Shown here in pieces: positions 2,656 through 34,932 of a stretch of DNA of 64,000 nucleotides. Location: NCBI RefSeq assembly GCF_902652985.1, contig NC_047022.1, positions 8,990,001 to 9,054,000 of the forward strand, read 5' to 3'. The position numbers and the translations under genes were made by a program. The stretch is from Pecten maximus (Eukaryota). The notes beneath the pieces were generated by a model, which saw only the letters and a program-made list of their open reading frames with translations, did no database searches and was not told the origin of the DNA. Numbering within the stretch: the first letter of the stretch is position 1; every line of letters begins with the position of its first letter.

Positions 2656-2909
2656 GATGGTTTACTATTTTATATATAAACTTTTTGTGGTTTGGCAAAT
2701 AACAAAAATGTAAATACCCGCTAATAAACGTAAAAATATTACGACGTGAACATTCGAAATCTTATATTAAAGGACTCAACACTTTACCTGACACACAAGT
2801 CATTTAATGTCCTTGTTACAGGTGCGCATAATCCGCACCTTACCCATGTGACTTCATACCGAACAAGGAAATTTAATATAGATTGCAAATGGCGACGTGT
2901 CGTTTACAG

Positions 2910-2933
2910 TTTATGTTATTTACGTTTCATTAG
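2910..2933 (+). promoter_or_regulatory. 3' splice acceptor 8 nt upstream of the TRIM ATG (also before copies 3-6: AG at 23130-31, 34923-24, 46061-62, 57516-17)
   Basis: tttatgttatttacgttt(c/a)cttAG|AAGCTGAGATG. T-rich tract plus TAG, conserved in the five full-length copies, implying an upstream exon. Confidence 0.6.
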
Positions 2934-2941
2934 AAGCTGAG

Positions 2942-4588
2942 ATGGCGAGTAAACTGTCTATTCGAAAGGCACAGGTACACGTGCCGGACACGTGTGCGTG
3001 GTGTGATAGTGTACAGGACGTGAACTGGTACTGTAATGACTGTCAGGAGGCTTTGTGTGATAAATGTAAGGAGACTCATCAGCGCGCGAGGAGGACAAGA
3101 AATGACGACGTTGTACCGATAAAACAGGCAAACAAAACCCGCCAGGCGGTACTACCAGAGGCATGTAAGGTACACCCCGGTAAAACATGCGATCTGTTCT
3201 GTACAGAGTGTAACGTCGCCATTTGTTCAATGTGTTTTACACAGAAACATAAACAGCATGCATTCAAACATTTTGAAGACGAAATTAACACCCAGAAACA
3301 TAACATGCGTGAGAAGTTGGAAACGTTAAAATTCAAGTTAGATCAGCTCAATGAGAAGTTATCACACCGTCGGCAAAAGAGTAAAACATTCAAAGAAAGT
3401 GTCGATATTATCTGTAAAGATGTCAAAGAGCGAGGAACAAAGCTGAAGGCAGAAATAGATTCTATAGTGGACAATGTCCTTACTGAATTATCATCACTGG
3501 TTGCTGAAGAAGACAAACTCCTTAAAGAGGATTGTGAACATGGTGATAAAAGTGTCAAACAAATAAAGCAGCTGATCGAAGAAGTGGAGCAGCTGTCGGA
3601 AAATCCATCAGGTGGAACTTTGTTTGAGCTGACGAGGAGACTTAGGACTACTATACCGCTTTATGACGTTACTGGTACGAGTACACATCCATACCTACCA
3701 AGTTTTGAAACCGGACAAATTGATACAGAACAGTTGACAAAAATGATCGGATTTGTTAAGGTCGGGAGTAGGAAGGATTCAACGCCTACATACGAGAAGA
3801 AGGATATCAATAATCAACATGTCCGAAAACTTACTTCATTCCAAACCCCTACAAAACTGTCCATAGTATCCATATGTCCAATAGACGACATCTATGCATG
3901 GATATCAATGTTTCTTTCTATGGACTTGCTCCGAGTCACTAAAAAGGGAAACGTCACGGAGACTGTGAAGCTTGATTTTGCACCTCGGAGTATAGCTTTG
4001 ACCAACTCTGGACTACTGATGACTCGAACGGATCAGTCACCGTTGATAAACAAACTGTCTGAGGACAGACGAGTGACGACCTTTGCCGACATTAGTCCAT
4101 TAAAGGCCTGGTTTATCAATGTTAGTGACACAGACGAGGTGTTCGTTAGTACTGGTACTACAACAATACTGGTACTAAACATGTCTGGGGACAAGGTTAG
4201 ACAAATCTCGTGTGGACAGGGTGGGAGCTTTATAGCTAGTTTGACCGGAGGGAATGTCGCGGTTATCACTAGAGGTATTGACTGTACTGAACTGAATATC
4301 ATCAACAAATCAGGACAGATCATATACACGTGGAGTGGAGAACTGGACAGTGGTCAGAAACTATGACAGAACACTCAGGATGGTATAGCATGTGATAAGT
4401 ATGACAGAGTATTTGTACCAGACTTAGTTACTCATCAGGTATACGTCGTCTCACGGAATGAGAGAAAGGCAAAATGTATCCTGGACAAGAAACACAGAGT
4501 ACGAAAGCCAACGATAGTAGGTGTAGACAGGTGTGGACATGTTTGGATCGGCTGTCGTGATGGTACAGTACATATTATGCAACTCTAA
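2942..4588 (+). pseudogene. TRIM-NHL-like gene copy 1 (B-box1/B-box2/coiled coil/NHL propeller) with premature in-frame TGA at 4364-4366
   Basis: ATG at 2942 (MASKLSIRKAQ). B-box1 CAWC..CNDC..CDKC..H and B-box2 CKVH..CTEC..CSMC..HKQH are present. TGA sits where paralogues have TCC/TCT/CCC. The frame continues intact (QNTQDGIACDKYDRVFVPD...GTVHIMQL) to TAA 4586-4588, giving the same 1647-nt length as copies 3, 5 and 6. Confidence 0.85.
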
Positions 4589-5527
4589 TCAACCAGGAGC
4601 TGCAGCTGTAGATAAACTATTGATGGTGGGATACTTCAATCCCTGTTCCTTACAATGACAGTTTAACTCTTTTTGAACTAGTTGTCGACTGTTTCGACTG
4701 TTGGGTTTTATACTTGTACATAAACACCACTTCATTTGACCTTTTCTTATGACGATTACTTTACCTCCTCAAATAGCCTGCCCCGTTTTTCTTGTTTTAT
4801 GATTGTCGATACAAGTAACAAAAAAATGAAAGCGAGTAATTTAACCAAAGGTGGCAACAAATGCATCGATAAAATGACGATCTGCTTATGTTTTAATCAC
4901 TTGACTTTTAAAGTAGAATCTGTCTGTCCTTATCATAGCCTTACTCATCCGACCAATCAGTGTCTAGTTTACATCTTGCCCGTGTCTGATTGATTCAGAT
5001 AGGAAAAAATCAAGCAATCACGTGAGGTACCGATTCAAATGTTTCTAAGTCAACACCAACAGTAGATGTATTGTGTCAGTAACATCGGCCTGATATTAAA
5101 TATTTTGTCTTTTGCTCACTTAGATACCCCCATCCTACTTTCCTATACATGTAATTCTCTCAGGATTGCAGACAAAATTGATCATATCGAACGTTTGTAA
5201 GGATTAAATAACATAACCAAAAGGCAGAGCCTCCAAAAAGTGTTACCTCCGCTAAACTGGAATAGATTAGTGCAGTGATAAATTAACTCACCCATAATAC
5301 CAACTATGAAAACAATCTACACGAACTATACTTAACACAATATTAATTAAGCGAGAGAGTTCCAGCGCTAAAATCCCTAAACTTACGCTAAAATATGTAC
5401 GTTGACATAATGTGTTTAAAGTGTCAGTATAATAGCCCTACAAGGATCAACAATATTCATGTTAAAGTAATGATGTCCAATTTTCAGGAAAAAGATTCGG
5501 AGGTTAATCAGTGATTTGCGGATATTT

Positions 5528-6118
5528 TGTTGTAGATATCGCTATTGTAAACAGATATTGTGTTATATATATAATGATATTATATACAATTTTGATGATA
5601 GATAAACATTCTTACAAGTATATATAGCACGTGATTGTGGATATTGTGTAATTGTCTTATACGGATATTGTATAGATTTCCTATATGTACGCTAAGCGTA
5701 CTTCAAGCTACATGGTTTATTTTTGATAGGATGTCAATTAATGAAATCTGAAGGCAGGAATGTTAAGTGAGAAGTTGTCACGTGTTCGTATGTATTGTGT
5801 CTTATAGTGTTTCGTGACAGTGTGAGATCCTCGTAACTACGGTAACAGGCTATGGCTAGTCAAGGTCGAAGGTCAGTGTTGTTGTTTTTTTGTTGGATCG
5901 CTAGCTTTGGAGATACTGATTTATAATTCAGCTTGCATGAAAGTATATGAAGAGGGACATCCTGTTGATGTTTGTGACATACGCGTGGTATTGACGAGAG
6001 AGAACGCTGTGTTGTGAATAAAGAGTCATCACTGTAAACCAAGTTTTACTTTTTATATTTTTTCATATTACTGGGTTTATCTTTAGAAAATATAACCTTA
6101 TGAACAATAACCATTATA
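5528..6118 (+). mobile_element. Possible degenerate solo LTR (duplicate ~14296-14886)
   Basis: Begins TGTTG close to where spacer A diverges from spacer B, contains AATAAA (6016), and is flanked by attt on both sides. The 3' end reads ..TTATA, not ..CA. Confidence 0.25.
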
Positions 6119-6870
6119 ATTTGATGATATATGTACATAAAAACATCAATTATTAATTATAACAAGAAATATCTTTAAAAAAGATAAACGGCATAGTTTT
6201 AAAGCTGGTGGTTATAAGGTAAAACTGCTGGTGAAATAAATCAGAGATCTATATACTCTAGTTTATACAATGAAAGTCTTTGAATTATTTAACGATCTAA
6301 TGCGTTTCAGCACGGGTAACAAAATTATATAAGTTTAAATCAGTTTTGGTGATAATAAGACTGCATTTGAATCGGGAATATAATTTTATTAATGTGTCAT
6401 TTGAAAAGATTCATTCTGCATTCAATCTTAAGTTGTTTCGTTTTTAACTGCATATCTGCATTTTGCATTTACCGCTACATTGCCCAATCGCATACTTCAT
6501 CCTGACCATTAACGTCACCTGTCGCGTCATATCCGGGGCAAAAAGAAAATTATACGGCTATGCCGGAAAAGGTTATCACAAATCGTTGATCAACACTCTG
6601 GATATGTATATTTTGTGACATACACGATAAAACGCATGCGCACAACAAACTAAAACACATGAAAACAAAAATGGCTTCCAACGTGAATCGACTGCGGTTG
6701 AAAACGATAACAGCTTCCGCAATAAAGAGAATAATGGCCAAATGGGTCAAGACAATCCTAGAATTACACCGGGGAAGCAATACAATAAGATAGGAATAGT
6801 TCAAACATGAAAACAGCAGAAATACGGACGCTGCTCGTATTCTGCTTGATTGTTGGATATTAGGCCATAA

Positions 6871-7011
6871 CAAACTTGGTAGTATTTATACAAACTCGGT
6901 AATGTTTATACCAAACTCAGTAATATTTACCCAAACTCAGTAATATTTACCCAAACTCAGTAATATTTACCCAAACTCAGTAATATTTACCCAAGCTCGG
7001 TAATATTTATA
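6871..7011. repeat. Minisatellite, 20-bp unit caaactcagtaatatttacc x7
   Basis: Tandem copies read directly. Confidence 0.95.
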
Positions 7012-9409
7012 CAGTCGCTGTCACTATACAATATATACAATGTTTCCACTTATATACACATAACTATTTGCGCCGGAATATGTACAGACCGTGCTATTTA
7101 ACATTTAAACCACTGTATATTATCGTTATCCAACTAACCCAGATGGAATATTTCGACTTGTAAGCTATCGTGTGTTTGTGTTTACAAATGAAAAGTAAAG
7201 ATTTAAAAATAATTTCCCTGCTAAATTTAGAGGGAGGTTACCAACTAAATCGAGTGGTCAATCTGGACATAGGGATCGACTGTGAATATTGATATAGCAC
7301 AGAAACATAACTGGAAAGGTACAAAACACGTACATTCAGTGGAAGTAACAACGTTTTTAGCGTGATGTCCCTGTAATCATTCAACATGTGTTTATGTTCT
7401 TTTTCATGTCGAAATAATTGATTGTATATTCCCTCTATGATTGCTGTTGTAATGTGGTAATTACTATTTACCTAATAGTGTTGACGATTACCCTAAGTAT
7501 AAAGATAATTATTATTAATATTCCTCTTGAAGTATTCTCTTCAATATTTTGTCATGAGCACGAATTCACATTAACAGCAAAACAGATAATACCAACATAC
7601 AAATAAAGCCTCAGATTTATGTTTCATTGATAAAGGTAGGACAAAGTAAGATCGTGTGTTTCTGGAGAATAAGTGTCATCTCTTCCATCAACGACATCCG
7701 CCATGTTTTCAACCCAATATTACACCAACACAATACAATTAACGATATGTTATGGGTACGGCGAGTTGTACATTAAACCATGGAACTAAACACTGAATAT
7801 TCAGATTTTGAGAGCAGAGAAACAGAACCAAACATTTTTTGTATACCTTACATCCCTTATTTCAATAGTCACTGGACCATACATTAAAGACGATTTTAAA
7901 TTTCAAATGTCGTTGCAAAAATAAAAAAAAAATCAATAAAAAATAAAAATAAAAAAATCAATATATAAAAATCAAACATAAACAAAAACAAAATCAAAGC
8001 AGAAAAATATTAATGATATATTCACTTTTGCAATTTTTCGTCGCAAACGAGACAATAATTCGTCGAGATTCAAATATCTTTTATAGCATTTCTAAGTGCG
8101 ATATTAAGTAAGACTTGTTTCAATTTTGCAAAATAATATTAATTCTTCATATTATTGTTTCAGATTCTGTTAATAATTGTACCAACTCAATGTCGTTTTA
8201 TATGACATCTACTATTGGTTTAATAATGGCTTCATTATATTTTAATCATTTTAAAACTACTTCAAACAGAACATATTGTACATACTTTATATAGTGCAAT
8301 TATCATTATGCTTTCTTCCATTGGGAAGATTACCTTTCCCCCTCTAACAATATATACATACAGCTAATGAACATGTCCAACTTGTAACTATATATACTGT
8401 GTTTGACATAATAAGTGCCCCCCCCCCCCTTTCTTTCTGAGAAGGATTATGGGTATACTTGCATCAAGGCAAACTAGTGTTTTGCTTTCCTCACTGAACT
8501 GCTTTTGTAATCTTTTATCAAAATAATGTTTCTTCAAACCTGGATTCACAAATAAGATTAGTTTATTTACAACCCATTCGTGATTTTGTAAAAGCAGTGT
8601 GCTTACTATGTCAAATACGGTAATTGGAGAAAAAGCATTAGTTTGAGAAAGACATTATTTCACATAAGCTTCCCCGGAACTATACTGTCTGTAATATGTA
8701 TTGTACACTGTGTTTTATGCATTTGGGATATTCAAGTAATATATATATCCAACTGGAGTAATCTAGAAATAAAGAAACTTCTGTGCATGCTGGGTGCTGG
8801 AGAAAAAGTAAACCTTATTGTAAAGTACTGTTTTAATCAAATCTCTTTTCTGGGTGGTCACTGTTTCTCGAAATTTAGAGTCCTCCTCCCGTTGGGTAGA
8901 TATGTTACTGGAATAGCCTTAAGGGTTTTTACCTGACCTGCTCATTACGTAAACAATTTGTGTCAATGTTTACAGGGAGAAAGATGTATCCAGCTTGCTC
9001 AACATTTATTTTTAACTGGAGGAAGTGAGACATGGAAAAAGTAAGAGATATTTAAGATCAACAAATGAGAGTTCGTGAGCGAGAGAGGGAATGTACTGTA
9101 AGTCATCTTATTTTTGTGTTTACATATATATATTTTCAAGACTTTAATGATAACGAGGGGGCCGAGATGAATTTCTAGGAATATAAAGAAATTCTATTGG
9201 TTCTTTATTATCAAATGTGTGGGATATTAATAGATTGTCTGTCAAACAAGGCTAAAAGGATACACATATAGGATACGGTATGTTCTCTTAATTTTCTCAA
9301 ATTAGCAATTCAAAAAGTCATTTTTAATAATTAAACACTTATTTATTATCAATATGAATGCAATCTAGGTGGCAGATAATAGAATGGCACCCATGTATCT
9401 GTCACTCAG

Positions 9410-9647
9410 GGCACAGTTGTTCAAAGGTGATTAGGCTTATCACACTTTAACAACAATATTAAAATCCTGATCAAATTATATCTGGTAAAACGAACTTGAC
9501 AAAATTTTAAGAGAACATAACAATGGTCAGTCTCTTCCAACCTGACTGTTTTAAGGAATACACACACTTAGGTTGTGAAGTTCAGGAGAAAGGAGATGTT
9601 CGTTATTAAGTGATCAAGCTAATAATCCCCTTTTAAACAATTTGGCC
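9410..9647. mobile_element. Degenerate MITE, PIF/Harbinger-like termini (duplicate 18181-18418)
   Basis: Imperfect TIRs ggcacagttgttcaaaggtgattag.. / ..ctaataatccccttttaaacaatttggcc. Confidence 0.45.
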
Positions 9648-11067
9648 ATGCATATTGACAAGCACTTATGTTTAACTCTTGTCTTTCTTAGATAAATACA
9701 TCCTTTATTTTCACCCATTTCCCTGCATGTTCATTTGAAAGAAAGCATCTTTAGATCAAATTCATTTCTGTGATTGATTCACAACCAATCTGACACATGG
9801 TACAAGGCCGAGCCTCGAAAGTGATATAAACATACATGTAGTTCCAAAATGACGTCATAGTAAAGCAATTGTTCTCAATCTGAAACTTTGCTGCATTGGA
9901 TTCAGAAGTGATTCAGTGACATTTGTCGAAATGGTGTTTAAATCATGTCCTGTAATCTAGACAGCATCAATGCGCTCATATATGCAGCCAATATCAACAT
10001 TGGGGTATTGAACCGGAGACCGCAAAGTCAAGTGTGAATATTGCAAAATAAGGTGATTTACGGTATACAAGGTGTGAGATAGAGATGTTTTGGGTTGGTT
10101 AAGGTGAGTTGAGATGGAAAGTGAAAGAAAAGGTTTTAAATAACGCGCATTTACATTTATATCTAATTTAAATGATGAACACGATATGTTGAACATATTC
10201 ACACAAACCTCTCTCAACCCAGGCCAAAAGTGTATGGTAACGTTGAACGATTATTTTGCTGTCAGATGTGCAATTGACAAGAGCTTAACAATTGTTTTGA
10301 CCTTTGAAGAACTAATTAATTTCTATTTCTGGTTCATTGTGATGATAATTTCACATTTTGAAGATTCGTAGTCTTTTATATGGTGGTGTATATTTTCAAA
10401 TGATCAGCAGTTGTTTTATGCTGCACTGAACTTAGTTCTTTTCTGTTTTAGTGTGAATTTTAAGTCATCATTTTAGTGCAATGGTTAATTTGTGTGCCAA
10501 CAGGTCCCTTAAGTAATCTTAATTTCAAAATAGCAAAAGGCCTTTTGTGCAACATGAGAAATGAAATTACTATGTTTATATACAGCATTTATCATATATA
10601 CCTGGTAGTCGAGGGTCAGATATGTACCTGGCACAGGTGGAAATGATAATCAGCAATGTTATCAAACACTCTAGTCAATGTATAGTTTGTAATCACTCAA
10701 GTCCTAACAAAACTCAATAAACTAATTAATACACTCGGACTTGATGTCTTGGTTATTTGTATCTAGGACTGATCAGATGACCTTATATATTATAGCCATT
10801 GTGCTTTGTTTGTTGTCATGCAGCCTGCATGGACGCTTCACCACTTTGACCTCTGAAGTACGGAAAGGATTTTAGCCCAACTTACCAAGAATATTCCCTG
10901 GTGGAAGGGGATCTGAGGTAATAAATGATGACCCTACTTTACTAAGTGATGAGGTTTCCTTGTCCAAGAAGGGGTACATTTCATATCAATAACAAGGAGG
11001 GATCTTGGAGCCGATCATCAGATGATCTTAATTGAATCTCTGCAAGACTGATATTTTCTCTACTTTA

Positions 11068-11370
11068 TTTTTAGCTCACCTGTCTAAAGGTGAATTAAAA
11101 ATCAGACGTAGAAATTAATTAAATGTATATCATGCTGGGGTAAAGAGCTACCAACTTTTTCAAACTTGTTCAAATGAATGACTTTGACTTGCATTCAAGG
11201 TCACTGGGTCAAAAAGGCTAAAATCTTTTAACAACTTCTCAATAACCAAGAGACCCGGGGAGTTGATATTATGCTTGTAGCCTGCTGAGTAAAGAGCTAC
11301 AAATTTTGTCCAAATGAACAACCTTGACCTACATTTAAAGTCACGGAGATCGGAAAGGCTACAATTTCTG
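11068..11370 (+). mobile_element. 5' fragment of HINE-type element (duplicate ~19839-20141)
   Basis: Starts tttttagctcacctg, followed by tgaccttgac/tcaaggtcac monomers. Confidence 0.55.
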
Positions 11371-11589
11371 TCACAGATTGGTCGTCAAGTTGTTTAATTG
11401 TTGATATATTTTGACAGGTAGTGTTGAGACAGGAAACTGGTTTACCTATAGAAACACAGTAGTAAAATCTCTTTACATGAGATAAAAACATTTCGGTTAG
11501 AAATTCAGTACTGTATATTTAGTCAAAGAAAACAACCGATACAGAAAAGCATATTCAGGATGACCTACATATTCGCTAACCAAGGGTTA

Positions 11590-12095
11590 CTCTAGCTAGG
11601 CTCGGAGATGGATGACTTATAGCCATCGTTTTTCGTCGTGCGAAAGACTTTTGTTGCAGAACGCTACTCCTCCTTAACCCTTGGGTGGATTACAACCAAA
11701 TTTAATGTGAAACATTGTTGAAGGAGGGTTGATTGGTGGGGCCCCAAAAGGGGACCTTTGCTGTGATTTAATTTGCTTTAAAAGCTTCTTCTATACTGTT
11801 CAGTGGATTACAATCAAATTATAACCAAATTTTGTGTGAACATAAAGGGATGGCAATCGTGAGTTATATAAATAAGGCTGGTGTGACCCCTGGGGTCAGA
11901 GGAGTGAGGTTTCCAAAGTTGAACTTTGGTTAAATATTGCTTTAAAACGCTACTACTTAATACAAATGGGAACTTGGCTGAAATTTTGTATTAAGATTCT
12001 GCTTTTCCTTTAAGCCAAAATGGATAAAAACCAAAATTGATCTGAAACATAACTGCTTGCGTTTAGATAATTTATGGTAATTTGTTATAATGATG
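11590..12095 (+). mobile_element. HINE-type element truncated by the duplication breakpoint
   Basis: Matches 20363-21029 minus one ~161-bp monomer. Ends abruptly at ..ataatgatg fused to TRIM coding sequence. Confidence 0.65.
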
Positions 12096-13355
12096 AAATT
12101 CAAGTTAGATCAGTTCAATGAGAAGTTATCAAACCGTCGGAAAGAGAGTAAAACATTCAAAGAAAGTGTCGATATTATCTGTAAAGATGTCAAAGAGCGA
12201 GGAACAAAGCTGAAGGCAGAAATAGATTCTATAGTGGACAATGTCCTTACTGAATTATCATCACTGGTTGCTGAAGAAGACAAACTCCTTAAAGAGGATT
12301 GTGAACATGGTGATAAAAGTGTCAAACAAATAAAGCAGCTGATCGAAGAAGTGGAGCAGCTGTCGGAAAATCCATCAGGTGGAACTTTGTTTGAGCTGAC
12401 GAGGAGACTTAGGACTACTATACCGCTTTATGACGTTACTGGTACGAGTACACATCCATACCTACCAAGTTTTGAAACCGGACAAATTGATACAGAACAG
12501 TTGACAAAAATGATCGGATTTGTTAAGGTCGGGAGTAGGAAGGATTCAACGCCTACATACGAGAAGAAGGATATCAATAATCAACATGTCCGAAAACTTA
12601 CTTCATTCCAAACCCCTACAAAACTGTCCATAGTATCCATATGTCCAATAGACGACATCTATGCATGGATATCAAGGTTTGAGTGTCTGGACCTGCTCCG
12701 AGTCAATAAAAAGGGAAACGTCACGGAGACTGTGAAGCTTGATTTTACACCTTGGAGTTTGGCTTTGACCAACTCTGGACTACTGATGACTCGAACGGAT
12801 CAGTCACCGTTGATACACAAACTGTTTGAGAACAGACGAGTGACGACCTTTGCTGACATCACTCCATTAAAGGCATGGTTTATCAGTGTTAGTGACACAG
12901 ACGATGTGTTCGTTAGTACTGGTACTACAACAATACTGGTACTAAACATGTCTGGGGACAAGGTTAGACAAATCTCGTGTGGACAGGGTGGGAGCTTTAT
13001 AGCTAGTTTGACCGGAGGGAATGTCGCGGTTATCACTAGAGGTATTGACTGTACTGAACTGAACATCGTCAACAAATTAGGTCAGATCATACACACGTGG
13101 AGTGGAGAACTGGACAATGGTCAGAAACTATCTCAGACTATTCAGAATAGTATAGCATGTGATAAATATGACAGAGTATTTGTACCAGACTTAGTTACTC
13201 ATCAGGTATACGTCGTCTCACGGAATGAGAGAAAGGCAAAATGTATCCTGGACAAGAAACACAGAGTACGAAAGCCAACGATAGTAGGTGTAGACAGGTG
13301 TGGACATGTTTGGATCGGCTGTCGTGATGGTACAGTACATATTATGCAACTCTAA
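12090..13355 (+). pseudogene. TRIM-NHL-like copy 2, 5'-truncated (lacks codons 1-129 incl. both B-boxes); open coiled-coil + NHL ORF with new ATG
   Basis: Repeat sequence ...ttgttataATGATG (same as 21017-21029) is fused at 12095/12096 to AAA TTC AAG, equivalent to K130 of copy 1 at 3329. ORF is open to the shared stop. Confidence 0.8.
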
Positions 13356-15638
13356 TCAACCAGGAGATGCAGCTGTAGATAAACTATTGATGGTGGGATA
13401 CTTCAATCCCTGTTCCTTACAATGACAGTTTAACTCTTTTTGAACTATTTGTCGACTGTTTCGACTATTAAGTTTTATACTTGTACATAAACACCACTTC
13501 ATTTGACCTTTTCTTATGACGATTACTTTACCTCCTCAAATAGCCTGCCCCGTTTTTCTTGTTTTATGATTGTCGATACAAGTAACAAAAAAATGAAAGC
13601 GAGTAATTTAACCAAAGGTGGCAACAAATGCATCGATAAAATGACGATCTGCTTATGTTTTAATCACTTGACTTTTAAAGTAGAATCTGTCTGTCCTTAT
13701 CATAGCCTTACTCATCCGACCAATCAGTGTCTAGTTTACATCTTGCCCGTGTCTGATTGATTCAGATAGGAAAAAAATCAAGCAATCACGTGAGGTACCG
13801 ATTCAAATGTTTCTAAGTCAACACCAACAGTAGATGTATTGTGTCAGTAACATCGGCCTGATATTAAATATTTTGTCTTTTGCTCACTTAGATACCCCCA
13901 TCCTACTTTCCTATACATGTAATTCTCTCAGGATTGCAGACAAAATTGATCATATCGAACGTTTGTAAGGATTAAATAACATAACCAAAAGGCAGAGCCT
14001 CCAAAAAGTGTTACCTCCGCTAAACTGGAATAGATTAGTGCAGTGATAAATTAACTCACCCATAATACCAACTATGAAAACAATCTACACGAACTATACT
14101 TAACACAATATTAATTAAGCGAGAGAGTTCCAGCGCTAAAATCCCTAAACTTACGCTAAAATATGTACGTTGACATAATGTGTTTAAAGTGTCAGTATAA
14201 TAGCCCTACAAGGATCAACAATATTCATGTTAAAGTAATGATGTCCAATTTTCAGGAAAAAGATTCGGAGGTTAATCAGTGATTTGCGGATATTTTGTTG
14301 TAGATATCGCTATTGTAAACAGATATTGTGTTATATATATAATGATATTATATACAATTTTGATGATAGATAAACATTCTTACAAGTATATATAGCACGT
14401 GATTGTGGATATTGTGTAATTGTCTTATACGGATATTGTATAGATTTCCTATATGTACGCTAAGCGTACTTCAAGCTACATGGTTTATTTTTGATAGGAT
14501 GTCAATTAATGAAATCTGAAGGCAGGAATGTTAAGTGAGAAGTTGTCACGTGTTCGTATGTATTGTGTCTTATAGCGTTTCGTGACAGTGTGAGATCCTC
14601 GTAACTACGGTAACAGGCTATGGCTAGTCAAGGTCGAAGGTCAGTGTTGTTGTTTTTTTGTTGGATCGCTAGCTTTGGAGATACTGATTTATAATTCAGC
14701 TTGCATGAAAGTATATGAAGAGGGACATCCTGTTGATGTTTGTGACATACGCGTGGTATTGACGAGAGAGAACGCTGTGTTGTGAATAAAGAGTCATCAC
14801 TGTAAACCAAGTTTTACTTTTTATATTTTTTCATATTACTGGGTTTATCTTTAGAAAATATAACCTTATGAACAATAACCATTATAATTTGATGATATAT
14901 GTACATAAAAACATCAATTATTAATTATAACAAGAAATATCTTTAAAAAAGATAAACGGCATAGTTTTAAAGCTGGTGGTTATAAGGTAAAACTGCTGGT
15001 GAAATAAATCAGAGATCTATATACTCTAGTTTATACAATGAAAGTCTTTGAATTATTTAACGATCTAATGCGTTTCAGCACGGGTAACAAAATTATATAA
15101 GTTTAAATCAGTTTTGGTGATAATAAGACTGCATTTGAATCGGGAATATAATTTTATTAATGTGTCATTTGAAAAGATTCATTCTGCATTCAATCTTAAG
15201 TTGTTTCGTTTTTAACTGCATATCTGCATTTTGCATTTACCGCTACATTGCCCAATCGCATACTTCATCCTGACCATTAACGTCACCTGTCGCGTCATAT
15301 CCGGGGCAAAAAGAAAATTATACGGCTATGCCGGAAAAGGTTATCACAAATCGTTGATCAACACTCTGGATATGTATATTTTGTGACATACACGATAAAA
15401 CGCATGCGCACAACAAACTAAAACACATGAAAACAAAAATGGCTTCCAACGTGAATCGACTGCGGTTGAAAACGATAACAGCTTCCGCAATAAAGAGAAT
15501 AATGGCCAAATGGGTCAAGACAATCCTAGAATTACACCGGGGAAGCAATACAATAAGATAGGAATAGTTCAAACATGAAAACAGCAGAAATACGGACGCT
15601 GCTAGTATTCTGCTTGATTGTTGGATATTAGGCCATAA

Positions 15639-15779
15639 CAAACTTGGTAGTATTTATACAAACTCGGTAATGTTTATACCAAACTCAGTAATATTTACCC
15701 AAACTCAGTAATATTTACCCAAACTCAGTAATATTTACCCAAACTCAGTAATATTTACCCAAGCTCGGTAATATTTATA
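15639..15779. repeat. Minisatellite, 20-bp unit x7 (duplicate of 6871-7011)
   Basis: Tandem copies read directly. Confidence 0.95.
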
Positions 15780-18700
15780 CAGTCGCTGTCACTATACAAT
15801 ATATACAATGTTTCCACTTATATACACATAACTATTTGCGCCGGAATATGTACAGACCGTGCTATTTAACATTTAAACCACTGTATATTATCGTTATCCA
15901 ACTAACCCAGATGGAATATTTCGACTTGTAAGCTATCGTGTGTTTGTGTTTACAAATGAAAAGTAAAGATTTAAAAATAATTTCCCTGCTAAATTTAGAG
16001 GGAGATTACCAACTAAATCGAGTGGTCAATCTGGACATAGGGATCGACTGTGAATATTGATATAGCACAGAAACATAACTGGAAAGGTACAAAACACGTA
16101 CATTCAGTGGAAGTAACAACGTTTTTAGCGTGATGTCCCTGTAATCATTCAACACGTGTTTATGTTCTTTTTCATGTCGAAATAATTGATTGTATATTCC
16201 CTCTATGATTGCTGTTGTAATGTGGTAATTACTATTTACCTAATAGTGTTGACGATTACCCTAAGTATAAAGATAATTATTATTAATATTCCTCTTGAAG
16301 TATTCTCTTCAATATTTTGTCATGAGCACGAATTCACATTAACAGCAAAACAGATAATACCAACATACAAATAAAGCCTCAGATTTATGTTTCATTGATA
16401 AAGGTAGGACAAAGTAAGATCGTGTGTTTCTGGAGAATAAGTGTCATCTCTTCCATCAACGACATCCGCCATGTTTTCAACCCAATATTACACCAACACA
16501 ATACAATTAACGATATGTTATGGGTACGGCGAGTTGTACATTAAACCATGGAACTAAACACTGAATATTCAGATTTTGAGAGCAGAGAAACAGAACCAAA
16601 CATTTTTTGTATACCTTACATCCCTTATTTCAATAGTCACTGGACCATACATTAAAGACGATTTTAAATTTCAAATGTCGTTGCAAAAATAAAAAAAAAA
16701 TCAATAAAAAATAAAAATAAAAAAATCAATATATAAAAATCAAACATAAACAAAAACAAAATCAAAGCAGAAAAATATTAATGATATATTCACTTTTGCA
16801 ATTTTTCGTCGCAAACGAGACAATAATTCGTCGAGATTCAAATATCTTTTATAGCATTTCTAAGTGCGATATTAAGTAAGACTTGTTTCAATTTTGCAAA
16901 ATAATATTAATTCTTCATATTATTGTTTCAGATTCTGTTAATAATTGTACCAACTCAATGTCGTTTTATATGACATCTACTATTGGTTTAATAATGGCTT
17001 CATTATATTTTAATCATTTTAAAACTACTTCAAACAGAACATATTGTACATACTTTATATAGTGCAATTATCATTATGCTTTCTTCCATTGGGAAGATTA
17101 CCTTTCCCCCTCTAACAATATATACATACAGCTAATGAACATGTCCAACTTGTAACTATATATACTGTGTTTGACATAATAAGTGCCCCCCCCCCACCCC
17201 TTTCTTTCTGAGAAGGATTATGGGTATACTTGCATCAAGGCAAACTAGTGTTTTGCTTTCCTCACTGAACTGCTTTTGTAATCTTTTATCAAAATAATGT
17301 TTCTTCAAACCTGGATTCACAAATAAGATTAGTTTATTTACAACCCATTCGTGATTTTGTAAAAGCAGTGTGCTTACTATGTCAAATACGGTAATTGGAG
17401 AAAAAGCATTAGTTTGAGAAAGACATTATTTCACATAAGCTTCCCCGGAGCTATACTGTCTGTAATATGTATTGTACACTGTGTTTTATGCATTTGGGAT
17501 ATTCAAGTAATATATATATCCAACTGGAGTAATCTAGAAATAAAGAAACTTCTGTGCATGCTGGGTGCTGGAGAAAAAGTAAACCTTATTGTAAAGTACT
17601 GTTTTAATCAAATCTCTTTTCTGGGTGGTCACTGTTTCTCGAAATTTAGAGTCCTCCTCCCGTTGGGTAGATATGTTACTGGAATAGCCTTAAGGGTTTT
17701 TACCTGACCTGCTCATTACGTAAACAATTTGTGTCAATGTTTACAGGGAGAAAGATGTATCCAGCTTGCTCAACATTTATTTTTAACTGGAGGAAGTGAG
17801 ACATGGAAAAAGTAAGAGATATTTAAGATCAACAAATGAGAGTTCGTGAGCGAGAGAGGGAATGTACTGTAAGTCATCTTATTTTTGTGTTTACATATAT
17901 ATATTTTCAAGACTTTAATGATAACGAGGGGGCCGAGATGAATTTCTAGGAATATAAATAAATTCTATTAGTTCTTTATTATCAAATGTGTGGGATATTA
18001 ATAGATTGTCTGTCAAACAAGGCTAAAAGGATACACATATAGGATACGGTATGTTCTCCTAATTTTCTCAAATTAGCAATTCAAAAAGTCATTTTTAATA
18101 ATTAAACACTTATTTATTATCAATATGAATGCAATCTGGGTGGCAGATAATAGAATGGCACCCATGTATCTGTCACTCAGGGCACAGTTGTTCAAAGGTG
18201 ATTAGGCTTATCACACTTTAACAACAATATTAAAATCCTGATCAAATTATATCTGGTAAAACGAACTTGACAAAATTTTAAGAGAACATAACAATGGTCA
18301 GTCTCTTCCAACCTGACTGTTTTAAGGAATACACACACTTAGGTTGTGAAGTTCAGGAGAAAGGAGATGTTCGTTATTAAGTGATCAAGCTAATAATCCC
18401 CTTTTAAACAATTTGGCCATGCATATTGACAAGCACTTATGTTTAACTCTTGTCTTTCTTAGATAAATACATCCTTTATTTTCACCCATTTCCCTGCATG
18501 TTCATTTGAAAGAAAGCATCTTTAGATCAAATTCATTTCTGTGATTGATTCACAACCAATCTGACACATGGTACAAGGCCGAGCCTCGAAAGTGATATAA
18601 ACATACATGTAGTTCCAAAATGACGTCATAGTAAAGCAATTGTTCTCAATCTGAAACTTTGCTGCATTGGATTCAGAAGTGATTCAGTGACATTTGTCGA

Positions 18701-20362
18701 AATGGTGTTTAAATCATGTCCTGTAATCTAGACAGCATCAATGCGCTCATATATGCAGCCAATATCAACATTGGGGTATTGAACCGGAGACCGCAAAGTC
18801 AAGTGTGAATATTGCAAAATAAGGTGATTTACGGTATACAAGGTGTGAGATAGAGATGTTTTGGGTTGGTTAAGGTGAGTTGAGATGGAAAGTGAAAGAA
18901 AAGGTTTTAAATAACGCGCATTTACATTTATATCTAATTTAAATGATGAACACGATATGTTGAACATATTCACACAAACCTCTCTCAACCCAGGCCAAAA
19001 GTGTATGGTAACGTTGAACGATTATTTTGCTGTCAGATGTGCAATTGACAAGAGCTTAACAATTGTTTTGACCTTTGAAGAACTAATTAATTTCTATTTC
19101 TGGTTCATTGTGATGATAATTTCACATTTTGAAGATTCGTAGTCTTTTATATGGTGGTGTATATTTTCAAATGATCAGCAGTTGTTTTATGCTGCACTGA
19201 ACTTAGTTCTTTTCTGTTTTAGTGTGAATTTTAAGTCATCATTTTAGTGCAATGGTTAATTTGTGTGCCAACAGGTCCCTTAAGTAATCTTAATTTCAAA
19301 ATAGCAAAAGGCCTTTTGTGCAACATGAGAAATGAAATTACTATGTTTATATACAGCATTTATCATATATACCTGGTAGTCGAGGGTCAGATATGTACCT
19401 GGCACAGGTGGAAATGATAATCAGCAATGTTATCAAACACTCTAGTCAATGTATAGTTTGTAATCACTCAAGTCCTAACAAAACTCAATAAACTAATTAA
19501 TACACTCGGACTTGATGTCTTGGTTATTTGTATCTAGGACTGATCAGATGACCTTATATATTATAGCCATTGTGCTTTGTTTGTTGTCATGCAGCCTGCA
19601 TGGACGCTTCACCACTTTGACCTCTGAAGTACGGAAAGGATTTTAGCCCAACTTACCAAGAATATTCCCTGGTGGAAGGGGATCTGAGGTAATAAATGAT
19701 GACCCTACTTTACTAAGTGATGAGGTTTCCTTGTCCAAGAAGGGGTACATTTCATATCAATAACAAGGAGGGATCTTGGAGCCGATCATCAGATGATCTT
19801 AATTGAATCTCTGCAAGACTGATATTTTCTCTACTTTATTTTTAGCTCACCTGTCTAAAGGTGAATTAAAAATCAGACGTAGAAATTAATTAAATGTATA
19901 TCATGCTGGGGTAAAGAGCTACCAACTTTTTCAAACTTGTTCAAATGAATGACTTTGACTTGCATTCAAGGTCACTGGGTCAAAAAGGCTAAAATCTTTT
20001 AACAACTTCTCAATAACCAAGAGACCCGGGGAGTTGATATTATGCTTGTAGCCTGCTGAGTAAAGAGCTACAAATTTTGTCCAAATGAACAACCTTGACC
20101 TACATTCAAAGTCACGGAGATCGGAAAGGCTACAATTTCTGTCACAGATTGGTCGTCAAGTTGTTTAATTGTTGATATATTTTGACAGGTAGTGTTGAGA
20201 CAGGAAACTGGTTTACCTATAGAAACACAGTAGTAAAATCTCTTTACATGAGATAAAAACATTTCGGTTAGAAATTCAGTACTGTATATTTAGTCAAAGA
20301 AAACAGAACAGATACAGAAAAGCATATTCAGGATGACCTACATATTCGCTAACCAAGGGTTA

Positions 20363-21098
20363 CTCTAGCTAAGCTCGGAGATGGATGACTTATAGCCATC
20401 GTTTTTCGTCGTGCGAAAGACTTTTGTTGCAGAACGCTACTCCTCCTTAACTCTTGCGTGGATTACTTCCAAATTTGGTTTGAAACATCATTGGTGGAAG
20501 GCCATCTTATTTTATATAAATGAGACTGGTCTGACCCCTGGGGCTGGAGGGGCAGGGCCCCAAAAGGGGAACTTTGGTGAATTCTTGCTTAAAAACCCCA
20601 CTCCATCTTAACCCTTGGGTGGATTACAACCAAATTTAATGTGAAACATTGTTGGAGGAGGGTTGATTGGTGGGGCCCCAAAAGGGGACCTTTGCTGTGA
20701 TTTAATTTGCTTTAAAAGCTTCTTCTATACTGTTCAGTGGATTACAATCAAATTATAACCAAATTTTGTGTGAACATAAAGGGATGGCAATCGTGATTTA
20801 TATAAATAAGGCTGGTGTGACCCCTGGGGTCAGAGGAGTGAGGTTTCCAAAGTTGAACTTTGGTTAAATATTGCTTTAAAACGCTACTACTTAATACAAA
20901 TGGGAACTTGGCTGAAATTTTGTATTAAGATTCTGCTCTTCCTTTAAGCCAAAATGGATAAAAACCAAAATTGATCTGAAACATAACTGGTTGCGTTTAG
21001 ATAATTTATGGTAATTTGTTATAATGATGCTTGATTGTGGGGTGTGTCCCTGCTGTAAGTGTTTGTCAGATGACCATTAAGGCCCATGGGCCTCTTGT
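20363..21098 (+). mobile_element. HINE-type element with ~160-bp internal repeats and intact 3' hairpin
   Basis: Same family as 1-408. Ends aaggcccatgggcctcttg. Confidence 0.65.
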
Positions 21099-22564: not shown

Positions 22565-23139
22565 CCTGGTAAACAGCGTTTTAAAACGTGTAAAACATAT
22601 ATTTATAGACTTTTTGCCTGTAGTTACTCGAGTATCGATATATCTTGAAATCATTTAACTCACTTTGCCCTTTTGTCGTGGTGCGGCGACCGTCGTCCGG
22701 GTAGTTAGCCAGGTGGGCCGGTGTAACGCGGAAAGTGGACCTTCGTTAAAAATTGACCTCGGGTGACTTCAACGTTGAAAATTGAACAATCCGCAAATTC
22801 TTAACTCCGGCTGTGAAATATGGACCCCGTTGAAAACTGACCCTATTACAGATGGTTTACTATTTTATACTAAACCTTTTGAGGTTTGGCAAATAACAAA
22901 AATGTAAATAACCGCTAATAAACGTAAAAATATTACGACGTGAACCCTTCGAAATCTTATATTATAGGTCTCAACACTTTACCTGACACACAAGTCATTT
23001 AATGTCCTTGATACATGTGCGCATAATCTGCACCTTCCCATGTGACTTCAGTCATACCGAACAAGGAAGTTTAATTTGGATTGCAAATGGTGACGTGTCG
23101 TTTACAGTTTATGTTATTTACGTTCCCTTAGAAGCTGAG

Positions 23140-24786
23140 ATGGCGAGTAAACTATCTATTCGTAAGGCACAGGTACACGTGCCGGACACGTGTGCGTGGT
23201 GTGATAGTGTACAGGACGTGAACTGGTACTGTAATGACTGTCAGGAGGCTTTGTGTGACAAATGTAAGGAGACCCATCAGCGCGCGAGGAGGACAAGGAA
23301 TGATGACGTTGTACCGATAAAACAGGCGAACAAACAAGCCGAGGTGGTACTACCAGAGATATGTAAGAGACACCCCGGTAAAACATGCGATCTGTTCTGT
23401 ACAGAGTGTAACGTCGCCATTTGTTCAATGTGTTTTACACAGAAACATAAACAGCATGCATTCAAACATTTTGAAGACGAAATTAACACCCAGAAACATT
23501 ACATGCGTGAGCAGTTGGAAACATTAAAATTCAAGTTAGATCAGTTCAATGAGAAGTTATCAAACCGTCGGAAAGAGAGCACAACATTCAAAGAAAGTGT
23601 CGATATTATCTGTAAAGATGTCAAAGAACAGGGAACAAAGCTGAAGGCAGGAATAGATTCTATAGTGGACAATGTCCTTGCTGAATTATCATCACTGGTT
23701 GCTGAAGAAGACAAACTCCTTAAACAGGAATGTGAACATGATGATAAAAGTGTTAAACAAATAAAGCAGCTGATCGAAGAAGTGGAGCAGCAGTCGGAAA
23801 ATCCATCAGGTGGAACTCTGTTTGGGCTGACGATGAGACTTAGGATCACCATACCGCTTTATGACGTTACTGGTACGAGTATACATCTATACCTACCAAG
23901 TTTTGAAACCGGACAAATGGATATAGAACAGTTGACAAAAATGGTCGGATTTGTTAAGGCCGGGAGTAGGAATGATTCAACGCCCATGTATGAGAAGAAG
24001 GAAATCAATAACCAGCATGTCCGAAAATTTACTACATTCCAAACCCCTCCAAACAAATCCATTCTATCCATATGTCTAATAGACGACACCTATGCATGGA
24101 TATCAAGGCTTGACTGTCTGGACCTGCTCCGAGTCAATAAAAAGGGAAACGTAACGGAGACTGTGAAGCTTGATGTTGCACCTTGGAGTTTGGCTTTGAC
24201 CGAATCTGGACTACTGATGACACAACGTGATCATTCAGCATTGATACACAAACTTTCGGAGGACAGGCGAGTGACGACCTTTGCCGACATCAGTCCATTA
24301 AAGTCCTGTAGTATCAGTGTTAGTAACACAGACGAGGTGTTCGTTAGTACTGACACTACAACAATACTGGTTCTGAACATGTCCGGGGACAAGGTTAGAC
24401 AACTCTCGTATGGACAGAGTGGGAGACGTATAGTTAGTTTGACCGGAGGGTATGTCGCTGTTACCACTGGAGGCGGTTTCTGTAAAGACCTGAATATCAT
24501 CGACAGATCAGGTCAGATCATACATACGTGGAGTGGAGAACTGGACACTGGTCAGACGCTACCCGGAACGAGACAGAATAGTATAGCATGTGATAAATAT
24601 GACAGAGTATTTGTACCAGACTTAGTTACTCATCAGGTATACGTCATCTCACGGAATGAGAAAAAAGCAAACTGTATCCTGGACAAGAAACATGGAGTAC
24701 GACATCCAATGGCAGTAGGTGTAGACTGGTGTGGACATGTTTGGATCGGGTGTCGTGATGGTACGGTACATATTATACAACTCTAA
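23140..24786 (+). CDS. RING-less TRIM-NHL-like protein copy 3 (548 aa)
   Basis: Intact ORF with two B-boxes, coiled coil and NHL-like blades (e.g. PWSLAL, NSIACDKYDRVFVPD, HPMAVGVDWCGHVWIGC). The ATG is conserved in all five full-length copies, just after a splice-acceptor-like tract. Confidence 0.9.
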   Translation: MASKLSIRKAQVHVPDTCAWCDSVQDVNWYCNDCQEALCDKCKETHQRARRTRNDDVVPIKQANKQAEVVLPEICKRHPGKTCDLFCTECNVAICSMCFTQKHKQHAFKHFEDEINTQKHYMREQLETLKFKLDQFNEKLSNRRKESTTFKESVDIICKDVKEQGTKLKAGIDSIVDNVLAELSSLVAEEDKLLKQECEHDDKSVKQIKQLIEEVEQQSENPSGGTLFGLTMRLRITIPLYDVTGTSIHLYLPSFETGQMDIEQLTKMVGFVKAGSRNDSTPMYEKKEINNQHVRKFTTFQTPPNKSILSICLIDDTYAWISRLDCLDLLRVNKKGNVTETVKLDVAPWSLALTESGLLMTQRDHSALIHKLSEDRRVTTFADISPLKSCSISVSNTDEVFVSTDTTTILVLNMSGDKVRQLSYGQSGRRIVSLTGGYVAVTTGGGFCKDLNIIDRSGQIIHTWSGELDTGQTLPGTRQNSIACDKYDRVFVPDLVTHQVYVISRNEKKANCILDKKHGVRHPMAVGVDWCGHVWIGCRDGTVHIIQL

Positions 24787-34344: not shown

Positions 34345-34932
34345 GGTGTTTACCTACCTGGTAAACAGCGTTTTAATCAAACATGTAAAACAAATATTTA
34401 TAGACTTTTTGTCTGTAGTTACTCTAGTATCGATATATCTTGAAACCATTTAACTCACTTTGCCCTTTTGTCGTGGTGCGGCGACCGTCGTCCGGTCAGT
34501 TGGCGGAAAATGGACCTTCGTTGAAAATTGACCCCGGGTGACTTCAACGTTGAATATTGACCTGAATGCCGTTGAAAATTGAACAATCCGCAAATTCTTA
34601 ACTCCGGCTGTGAAACATGGACCCCGTTGAAAACTGACCCTATTACAGATGGTTTACTATTTTATATCTAAACCTTTTGAGGTTTGACAAATAACAAAAA
34701 TGTAAATATCCGCTAATAAACGTTAAAATATCACGATATGAACCTTCGAAATCTTATATTATAGGACTCTTTACCTGACACACAAGTCATTTAACGTCCT
34801 TGTTACAGGTGCGCATAATCCGCACCTTACCCATGTGACTTCAGTCATACCAAACAAGGAAGTTTAATTTAGATTGCAAATGGTGACTTGTCGTTTACAG
34901 TTTATGTTATTTACGTTTCCTTAGAAGCTGAG

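What the first reader, a model, noticed from the sequence alone, without database searches (positions are those of the whole stretch)
12660..13170. Copy 2 propeller is a patchwork of other paralogues although its spacer is almost identical to copy 1's: localised gene conversion / segment shuffling
Seen: about 7.5 kb of spacer after copies 1 and 2 differs only by scattered SNPs and small indels, and their coiled-coil DNA is essentially identical. Yet 12675-13170 differs from 3908-4400 in dense clusters. tttgagtgtctggacctgctccgagtcaat and gattttacaccttggagtttggct match copy 4. ctgaacatcgtcaacaaattaggt matches copy 6. The intervening AWF..QGGSF..ITRGIDCTE and terminal RKPTI match copy 1. Silent sites travel with the tracts (gacCtg, aaC, ggT). 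Inference: short conversion tracts reassort binding loops faster than neutral spacer DNA diverges, giving combinatorial diversity. Which copy was donor or recipient cannot be fixed from this window.
Basis: partly seen in the sequence, partly recalled or inferred. Interest (0 to 1): 0.85.

Follow-up and report, generated by a model that had tools for sequence, protein, structure and literature searches.

The report
Gene-conversion patches in a young scallop duplicate
In a tandem array of B-box/NHL-propeller genes of the king scallop, a very recent partial duplicate carries several short stretches copied from other array members; this is real, but it is ordinary gene conversion between paralogues rather than a new diversity-generating system.

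Summary
The window is Pecten maximus chromosome sequence. It holds six tandem RING-less B-box/B-box/coiled-coil/NHL-like propeller genes; at least three more lie on the same scaffold.

Units 3329-12095 and 12096-21029 form a blunt tandem duplication. They differ by 60 substitutions. 44 fall in the first 1.5 kb, the only part with paralogues, and 16 in 7.4 kb of spacer (Fisher p 4e-22). Synonymous divergence in the propeller is 0.058 against 0.0022 in the spacer.

Copy 2 is base-for-base identical to:
- copy 4 over 12677-12721 and 12723-12825;
- copy 6 over 13056-13087;
- a paralogue on unplaced scaffold C321 over 13065-13132;
- copies 0, 3 and 5 over 12096-12148.

Between these tracts it keeps states private to copies 1 and 2. 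The distribution of private states points to copy 2 as recipient in the copy-4-like and copy-6/C321-like tracts. Short-read contigs from three samples reproduce the mosaic exactly or with one mismatch, so it is germline and not a polishing artefact.

The adaptive reading is not supported. pN/pS is 0.8-0.9, copy 2 lacks its B-boxes and promoter, and copy 1 has a premature stop. The spacer escapes conversion simply because it has no donors. The duplication junction and copy 1's sequence were not verified by reads.

The parts
2942..4366 (+). Copy 1 CDS from the conserved MASKLS start (B-box, B-box, coiled coil, propeller), cut short by a premature TGA at 4364-4366. The rest of the frame (4367-4588) is otherwise intact.
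   Evidence: ORF list and translation; codon table; protein alignment; Pfam B-box
3329..12095 (+). Duplication unit A: the 3' 1.26 kb of the copy 1 CDS, the 3' UTR and about 7.5 kb of unique spacer.
   Evidence: Self-BLAST at 99.1% identity; alignment
12096..21029 (+). Duplication unit B. The junction 12095|12096 is blunt with no microhomology. Spacer letters ATGATG give copy 2 a fortuitous start codon.
   Evidence: junction letters
12090..13355 (+). Copy 2 ORF (421 aa): coiled coil plus a complete six-bladed NHL-like propeller. It has no B-boxes and lacks the ~450-bp upstream block that the full-length copies share.
   Evidence: model with pLDDT 93; TRIM2/TRIM3 NHL match at TMq 0.82-0.83
12096..12148 (+). 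Tract T1 (53 bp). Copy 2 is identical to copies 0, 3 and 5 (23527-23579, 46458-46510). Copy 1 differs at 4 sites and resembles copy 4. Polarity is ambiguous.
12149..12675 (+). Unconverted block: copy 1 equals copy 2 throughout (0 differences), with 7 states private to the pair.
12677..12825 (+). Tract T2 (149 bp). Copy 2 equals copy 4 (35904-36052) except at 12722. It covers 12 copy 1/2 differences and contains no state private to the pair. Copy 2 is inferred to be the recipient.
   Evidence: exact read contig 12693-12784
12826..12905 (+). Patch T3 (80 bp). There are 8 copy 1/2 differences. Three are private to copy 2 and three are shared only with paralogues on unplaced scaffolds. No donor exists in the assembly.
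   Evidence: exact read contigs 12763-12939 in X1 and 12798-12939 in X2
12906..13055 (+). Unconverted block with 7 states private to copies 1 and 2 (AWF..QGGSF..ITRGIDCTE region).
13056..13132 (+). Tract T4. Copy 2 equals copy 6 (58873-58904) over 13056-13087, and equals the C321 paralogue over 13065-13132. Copy 2 is inferred to be the recipient.
   Evidence: exact read contig 12956-13085 bridges the private block and the tract
13133..13166 (+). Patch T5. There are 7 differences in 34 bp. Copy 1 is private at 6 of them, including its stop codon, while copy 2 is near the family consensus. All four read sets read C, not T, at 13133.
13367..13471 (+). Five scattered 3'-UTR differences of mixed affinity.
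13596..21029 (+). Spacer of unit B: 16 substitutions and a few indels against unit A (0.22%). No homologue lies beside the other copies, apart from short blocks at about 80% identity.

Best explanation
This is germline interlocus (ectopic) gene conversion in a tandem array of RING-less TRIM-like genes (B-box, B-box, coiled coil, six-bladed NHL-like propeller) on a Pecten maximus chromosome.

A very young 8.8-kb tandem duplication copied the 3' two-thirds of copy 1 plus its spacer, producing the 5'-truncated copy 2. Since then, at least three short patches of copy 2 (about 50-150 bp each) were overwritten from at least two or three different paralogues: copy-4-like, copy-6/C321-like and copy-0/3/5-like. 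A fourth patch has no known donor.

Conversion needs a homologous donor. Only the first 1.8 kb of the unit has paralogues, so the changes are confined there and the 7.4-kb spacer records only point mutation.

Shown: the patchy divergence, the exact donor identities, the synonymous excess, and the presence of the mosaic in reads. Inferred: the direction (copy 2 as recipient), the number of events, and that the duplication is a true tandem duplication.
For: - Divergence is 44/1500 in the genic part against 16/7434 in the spacer.
- pS is 0.058 in the propeller against 0.0022 in the spacer, p 8e-10.
- Copy 2 is exactly identical to copy 4 over 45+103 bp, to the C321 copy over 68 bp, to copy 6 over 32 bp and to copies 0/3/5 over 53 bp.
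- Triplet tests give p 1e-6 (copy 4) and 4e-5 (copy 6).
- 28 states private to copies 1+2 lie in the unchanged blocks and none in the changed ones. There, copy 1 has 15 private states and copy 2 has 4.
- Copy 1's private patches have no donor in the genome, as expected if copy 1 keeps the ancestral lineage sequence.
- Read contigs match copy 2 exactly at 12693-12784, 12763-12939 and 12956-13085 in X1, and at 12798-12939 in X2. In X5, 12763-13065 matches with one mismatch. Each of these is 4-10 differences away from copy 1.
- The other seven copies are mosaic too (PHI-like p 5e-5), so conversion and unequal exchange are general in this array.
- The spacer has no paralogue.
Against: - No read contig shown bridges the junction 12095|12096, and copy 1's version was not seen in the reads laid. 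This may be an effect of the 95% likeness filter.
- AU tests on the short segments do not reject a copy 1+2 clade.
- T3 has no donor.
- T1 polarity is ambiguous.
- All or nearly all events falling in copy 2 is mildly unexpected.
- 13133 and the extra A at 13771 are not backed by reads, so the assembly has small errors here.
Confidence: 0.72

Rival explanations
1. False haplotypic duplication. Units A and B are the two alleles of one 11.4-kb unit that the wtdbg2 assembly laid in tandem. The mosaic differences are then allelic. They would still have been made by conversion from paralogues, but in a single full-length gene with an intact allele (copy-2 type) and a nonsense allele (copy-1 type).
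For: - The assembly pipeline description mentions no haplotig purging, and heterozygosity is 1.71%.
- Without unit A, the spacing from copy 1 to copy 3 would be 11.4 kb, typical of the array (spacings).
- The first and last A/B differences lie 18 bp and 39 bp from the unit ends.
- No bridging contig is shown at the junction.
Against: - The junction lies inside gap-free contig sequence: no N in the window.
- The spacers differ by 0.22%, eight times less than the genome-wide 1.71% heterozygosity.
- The junction is a clean blunt join that would need chimeric reads.
Confidence: 0.13
2. Mosaic at birth. Copy 2 was synthesised in one replication-based repair event (break-induced replication with template switches) that copied mostly copy 1 but hopped briefly to other paralogues. 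No later conversions are needed.
For: - All patches lie in the first 1.4 kb of the new unit, and one starts at its very first base (T1, 12096-12148).
- The changes are nearly all in copy 2.
- The junction is blunt and non-homologous.
Against: - The position of the patches is equally explained by where paralogous homology exists.
- The older copies show the same kind of mosaic.
- Nothing in the sequence distinguishes one event from several.
Confidence: 0.08
3. Consensus or polishing artefact. Short reads of other paralogues mis-mapped during the three freebayes rounds and rewrote patches of copy 2.
For: Homozygous non-reference edits from 10X reads were applied three times. 13133 and 13771 disagree with all read sets.
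Against: De Bruijn contigs built directly from reads carry the junctions between private and donor-like states, exactly, in two DNA samples. An independent 2017 run carries them with one mismatch over 303 nt.
Confidence: 0.03
4. Point mutation under diversifying selection, or local hypermutation of the propeller, without any transfer of sequence.
For: The family's propeller evolves faster than its B-boxes (dN/dS 0.55 against 0.28). Three states in T3 are private to copy 2.
Against: - pN/pS of the copy 1/2 differences is 0.8-0.9.
- Synonymous sites are 26 times more diverged than the spacer.
- The new states pre-exist as contiguous runs in paralogues.
Confidence: 0.03

Closest known systems
Interlocus (non-allelic) gene conversion in tandem multigene families, such as MHC, KIR, globins and plant R-gene clusters (established knowledge)
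   Same: Short tracts of tens to hundreds of bp are copied from paralogues into a recipient. They create mosaic genes, carry silent and replacement changes together, and outpace point mutation per site.
   Different: Here a near-identical 7.4-kb spacer beside the gene gives an internal clock for the age of the recipient. The recipient is a truncated partial duplicate.
TRIM-NHL proteins (TRIM2, TRIM3, TRIM71/LIN-41, Drosophila Thin and Brat)
   Same: B-box, coiled coil and a C-terminal six-bladed NHL-type propeller. The model matches the TRIM2/TRIM3 NHL domains at TMq 0.82-0.83.
   Different: There is no RING domain (Pfam finds only B-boxes), and the Pfam NHL repeat profile does not match. Sequence identity to solved NHL domains is 10-14%. 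This is a scallop-specific expansion that NCBI names 'uncharacterized' or 'TRIM45-like'.
Fish finTRIM and other multigene TRIM subsets with hypervariable C-terminal domains (PMC3137616, PMC2533329)
   Same: Lineage-specific tandem TRIM expansions whose C-terminal recognition domain varies most.
   Different: Those carry B30.2/SPRY domains, not propellers, and have documented positive selection in loops. Here the region-wide dN/dS is 0.55 and no excess is seen in the converted tracts.
FREP diversification in the snail Biomphalaria (somatic gene conversion and point mutation; from memory)
   Same: A mollusc recognition-gene family in which mosaic sequences arise from a set of source genes.
   Different: The same copy 2 mosaic is present in three samples, one of them probably RNA from another study. 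It therefore behaves as an inherited allele. Nothing here suggests a somatic process.

Membership tests
Interlocus gene conversion | Divergence between otherwise near-identical duplicates is concentrated in discrete patches. | tested here: met
   35 differences in 339 bp of tracts against 9 in 1475 bp of remaining genic DNA and 16 in 7434 bp of spacer
Interlocus gene conversion | The patch sequence pre-exists as a contiguous identical run in another paralogue. | tested here: met
   T1, T2 and T4 are exact. T3 has no donor in the assembly.
Interlocus gene conversion | Silent and replacement changes move together, so this is not selection on point mutations. | tested here: met
   pN/pS 0.8-0.9; pS 0.058 against 0.0022 in the spacer
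Interlocus gene conversion | The transfer is non-reciprocal: the donor is unchanged. | not testable with these tools
   Needs the pre-event haplotypes. Only the polarity could be inferred, from the private states.
Interlocus gene conversion | The mosaic exists in real molecules, not only in the consensus. | tested here: met
   Exact read contigs cross the tract borders in X1 and X2. X5 matches with one mismatch over 303 nt. Copy 1's version and the duplication junction were not verified.
TRIM-NHL protein family | N-terminal RING finger | tested here: not met
   Pfam finds only zf-B_box and ANCHR-like B-box.
TRIM-NHL protein family | B-box zinc fingers followed by a coiled coil | tested here: met
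   PF00643 matches twice, E 3e-13. The coiled coil is inferred from sequence and position only.
TRIM-NHL protein family | C-terminal six-bladed NHL propeller | tested here: met
   Model pLDDT 93 with about 24 strands. Best matches are the TRIM2, TRIM3, Thin and Lin41 NHL domains, TMq 0.79-0.83. The Pfam NHL profile does not match.
Somatic diversification system (FREP-like) | Variants arise in somatic cells and differ between cells or tissues of one animal. | tested here: not met
   The same mosaic is found in three samples from three studies. No tissue-resolved data were available.

The most novel reading that the evidence does not exclude
The array acts as a cassette system. Promoter-less or broken copies such as copy 2 and copy 1 serve as reservoirs. 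Frequent short conversions among 12 or more paralogues, with the per-site chance of being overwritten roughly 100-200 times the per-site substitution chance since the duplication, continually reshuffle surface patches of an NHL-type recognition propeller in the germline. This would give scallop populations a large combinatorial repertoire of an innate immune receptor. One corollary: the conversion over 13133-13166 removed an inherited stop codon from copy 2.
Probability: 0.1. Interest if true: 0.65.

Novelty: new member of a known kind. Interest (0 to 1): 0.3.

Why it matters
The locus is a clean natural example in a bivalve in which the age of a duplicate (0.2% spacer divergence) and the effect of ectopic conversion (about 10% divergence inside tracts) can be read side by side. 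Conversion here changes paralogues far faster than point mutation does. This matters in three practical ways:
- for anyone building trees or dN/dS estimates for the large bivalve TRIM-like expansions;
- for judging assembly quality in such arrays;
- for studies of presence/absence and copy-number variation in scallop immune-type gene clusters.

It does not reveal a new mechanism.

Tried and rejected
- **AU topology tests** on the two best tracts (140 and 109 bp) could not reject a copy 1+2 clade (p 0.45 and 0.41). The segments are too short and branch lengths are free, so I relied on divergence heterogeneity and triplet tests instead.
- **Genome-wide searches** for a donor of T3 and of copy 1's private patches found nothing above 92% and 90% identity.
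- **Copy 1's upstream sequence** did not settle the polarity of T1. Copy 1 is about equally close to copies 3, 4 and 5 there.
- **A link between tracts and selected loops** was not found. pN/pS among the other copies is no higher in converted than in unconverted segments.
- **Read depth** could not be used to count copies. The runs are kept as contigs and the tool warns against it. The depth of shared and copy-2-specific contigs looked similar in three runs, which fits no simple model, so I leave it unexplained.
- **The letters at 11643-11721 read differently in X1 and X2.** They lie in a high-copy repeat (depth in the thousands), so they say nothing about unit A against unit B.
- **Earlier scan notes** held nothing for this place.
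- **Literature searches** found no report of this array or of gene conversion in bivalve TRIM-like genes in the held library.

Full report
**What the window is.** The window is G000:C8:8990001-9054000 of a 918,306,378-bp assembly in 3,983 scaffolds. These are the published figures for the king scallop Pecten maximus (PMC7191990). The closest database proteins are named Pecten maximus.

The window holds six tandem single-exon ORFs on the + strand:

| Copy | Coordinates |
|---|---|
| 1 | 2897-4366 |
| 2 | 12090-13355 |
| 3 | 23002-24786 |
| 4 | 34888-36582 |
| 5 | 46026-47717 |
| 6 | 57481-59172 |

Three more copies flank the window on the same scaffold (here c0, c7, c8), and at least five lie on unplaced scaffolds C647 and C321.

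Full-length copies have two B-boxes (Pfam PF00643, E 3e-13) and no RING. A coiled-coil region follows, then a 254-residue C-terminal domain. AlphaFold models that domain at pLDDT 93 as an all-beta structure of about 24 strands. Its best structural matches are the NHL propellers of TRIM2, TRIM3, Thin and Lin41 (TMq 0.79-0.83). Relatives are abundant in other scallops (Mizuhopecten, Argopecten, Ylistrum) under names such as 'TRIM45-like'.

**The duplication.** 12096-20501 matches 3329-11728 at 99.1% identity, and 20594-21029 matches 11660-12095. The other copies match only the first 1.8 kb, at 88-91%, and the spacer has no counterpart beside them.

The junction reads ...tataatgatg|aaattcaag.... 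The same spacer continues with cttgattg... after 21029, and the gene reads ...acgttaa|aattcaag... in copy 1. The join is therefore blunt with no microhomology.

Copy 2 thus starts in the middle of the coiled coil. It lacks both B-boxes and the ~450-bp upstream block shared by full-length copies, and it owes its ATG to spacer letters. Copy 1 has a single premature TGA at 4364-4366 in an otherwise intact frame.

Of 60 substitutions between the units, 44 lie in 12096-13595 and 16 in the remaining 7.4 kb (Fisher p 4e-22). Within the genic part they form patches separated by difference-free runs of 531, 158 and 200 bp. The permutation p for the longest run is 5e-6.

Synonymous divergence in the propeller is 0.058 against 0.0022 in the spacer (p 8e-10). 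pN/pS is 0.8-0.9. Selection on new point mutations therefore cannot be the cause: already-diverged sequence was moved in.

**Donors.** I aligned copy 2 against the 13 other copies that are 85% or more identical to it. Copy 2 is base-for-base identical to:
- copies 0, 3 and 5 over 12096-12148;
- copy 4 over 12677-12721 and 12723-12825;
- copy 6 over 13056-13087;
- the second C321 paralogue over 13065-13132;
- copy 3 over 13143-13214.

Copy 1 differs from every copy by 8% or more in the same places. A 3SEQ-type test with copy 2 as child of copy 1 and a second parent gives p 1e-6 for copy 4, 4e-5 for copy 6 and 7e-5 for the C321 copy. Copy 1 as child gives nothing comparable.

Patch 12826-12905 has no donor. 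Three of its states are private to copy 2 and three occur only in the unplaced-scaffold paralogues. The donor may be unassembled or lie on the other haplotype.

**Direction.** Sites where copies 1 and 2 share a state found in no other copy number 28 in the unchanged blocks and zero in the changed ones. In the changed segments copy 1 has 15 private states (0.044 per bp, the upper end of the background density) and copy 2 has 4, three of them in the donor-less patch. Copy 1's private patches have no better match than 90% anywhere in the genome.

The simplest reading is that copy 1 keeps the lineage's own sequence, and copy 2 was overwritten in 12677-12825 and 13056-13166. The 5' patch 12096-12148 is ambiguous.

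**Trees.** Segment trees place copies 1 and 2 as identical or as sisters (support 100) in 12147-12675, 12906-13057 and 13167-13909. Copy 2 joins copy 4 at zero distance in 12676-12815, and joins copy 6/C321 in 13058-13166. AU tests on these short segments do not reject a copy 1+2 clade (p 0.45 and 0.41). I report this as a limit of power.

**Is it an artefact?** The assembly was made with wtdbg2, polished with Arrow and three times with freebayes from 10X reads. Mis-polishing in a gene family was therefore a real concern.

Contigs that Logan built directly from short reads answer it for copy 2. In run X1, contigs of 92, 177 and 130 nt match 12693-12784, 12763-12939 and 12956-13085 exactly. In X2 (another sample and study), 12798-12939 matches exactly. 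In X5 (a 2017 study, guessed to be RNA), a 316-nt contig matches 12763-13065 with one mismatch. Each of these differs from copy 1 at 4-10 sites, and from every other copy at one or more sites; only the shortest contig, 12693-12784, is within 1-2 sites of several other copies.

These contigs cross the borders between donor-like and lineage-private states. X1 may be the assembled animal and X2 possibly too, so the independent support is chiefly X5.

The mosaic is thus a real, inherited sequence and is possibly transcribed. Nothing points to somatic shuffling.

Small assembly doubts remain. All four runs read C at 13133, and X1's only contig there, like most contigs in X2 and X5, lacks the extra A at 13771.

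Two things were not verified. No listed contig bridges 12095|12096, and copy 1's variant patches were not seen, possibly because they fall under the 95% likeness filter.

**Rivals.**
- *False haplotypic duplication.* This would turn copies 1 and 2 into alleles of one full-length gene. It is not excluded. Against it stand the gap-free junction and a spacer divergence eight times below the genome's 1.71% heterozygosity. It would not change the conclusion that the patches come from paralogues.
- *One-step origin by template-switching replication.* This fits the patch at the first base of the unit and the one-sidedness of the changes, but it is not required.
- *Polishing artefact, and selection on point mutations.* These are largely refuted, as shown above.

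**Context and meaning.** The seven other copies are themselves mosaics (PHI-like statistic 0.316 against 0.466 expected, p 5e-5; many significant triplets). For example, copy 7 is copy-4-like with a copy-3-like insert at 12854-13020.

Family-wide dN/dS rises from 0.28 (B-boxes) to 0.55 (propeller). Variable residues cluster in a few loop patches. The segments converted in copy 2 show no higher pN/pS than unconverted ones, and the two most variable patches were not converted.

With copy 2 truncated and copy 1 carrying a stop, I see no evidence that these particular conversions serve recognition diversity. They show that conversion in this array is frequent. About 22% of the homologous 1.8 kb was overwritten in the time the spacer accumulated 0.2% substitutions (my estimate).

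This is textbook concerted or mosaic evolution in a tandem family, seen in a new family and organism. The near-identical spacer provides an unusually clean internal clock.

Noticed in passing
window 4364-4366: Copy 1 has a premature TGA inside a cluster of 8 copy-1-specific changes in 35 bp. The rest of its frame is intact. If that cluster is ancestral to copies 1 and 2, the conversion in copy 2 removed the stop.
   Followed up: partly
L004 (G000:C8:9057323-9062139), copy 7: Copy 7 lacks about 24 codons, including the conserved MASKLS start and the first cysteines of B-box 1, so it may be a pseudogene.
   Followed up: no
L011 (G000:C321:1-3371): The paralogue on unplaced scaffold C321 has an in-frame stop at propeller residue 96. 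Copies on C647 and C321 form a separate subgroup and share some states with copy 2's donor-less patch.
   Followed up: partly
G000:C8:9135304-9135882 and C8:7137471-7137676: These are runs of about 59-bp matches spaced 66 bp apart, each about 80-85% identical to positions 1193-1253 of the query (near the 3' end of the propeller CDS). They look like a minisatellite derived from a gene fragment, about 81 kb downstream of the window.
   Followed up: no
window 11600-12061 and 20446-20606: The end of the duplicated unit is a very high-copy repeat: read-contig depth is in the thousands, with many internal joints. Unit B has 161 bp more of it than unit A.
   Followed up: no
window 13133 and 13771: Two assembly letters of copy 2 are not supported by the read sets: T at 13133 (all four runs read C) and an extra A at 13771 (absent from X1's only contig and most contigs in X2 and X5). 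They are probably residual consensus errors.
   Followed up: partly
window 12693-13809, runs X1, X2, X5: Contigs specific to copy 2 and contigs shared by copies 1 and 2 have similar depth figures in three runs, where a two-fold difference would be expected. The tool warns that contig depth is unreliable, so this is left unexplained.
   Followed up: no
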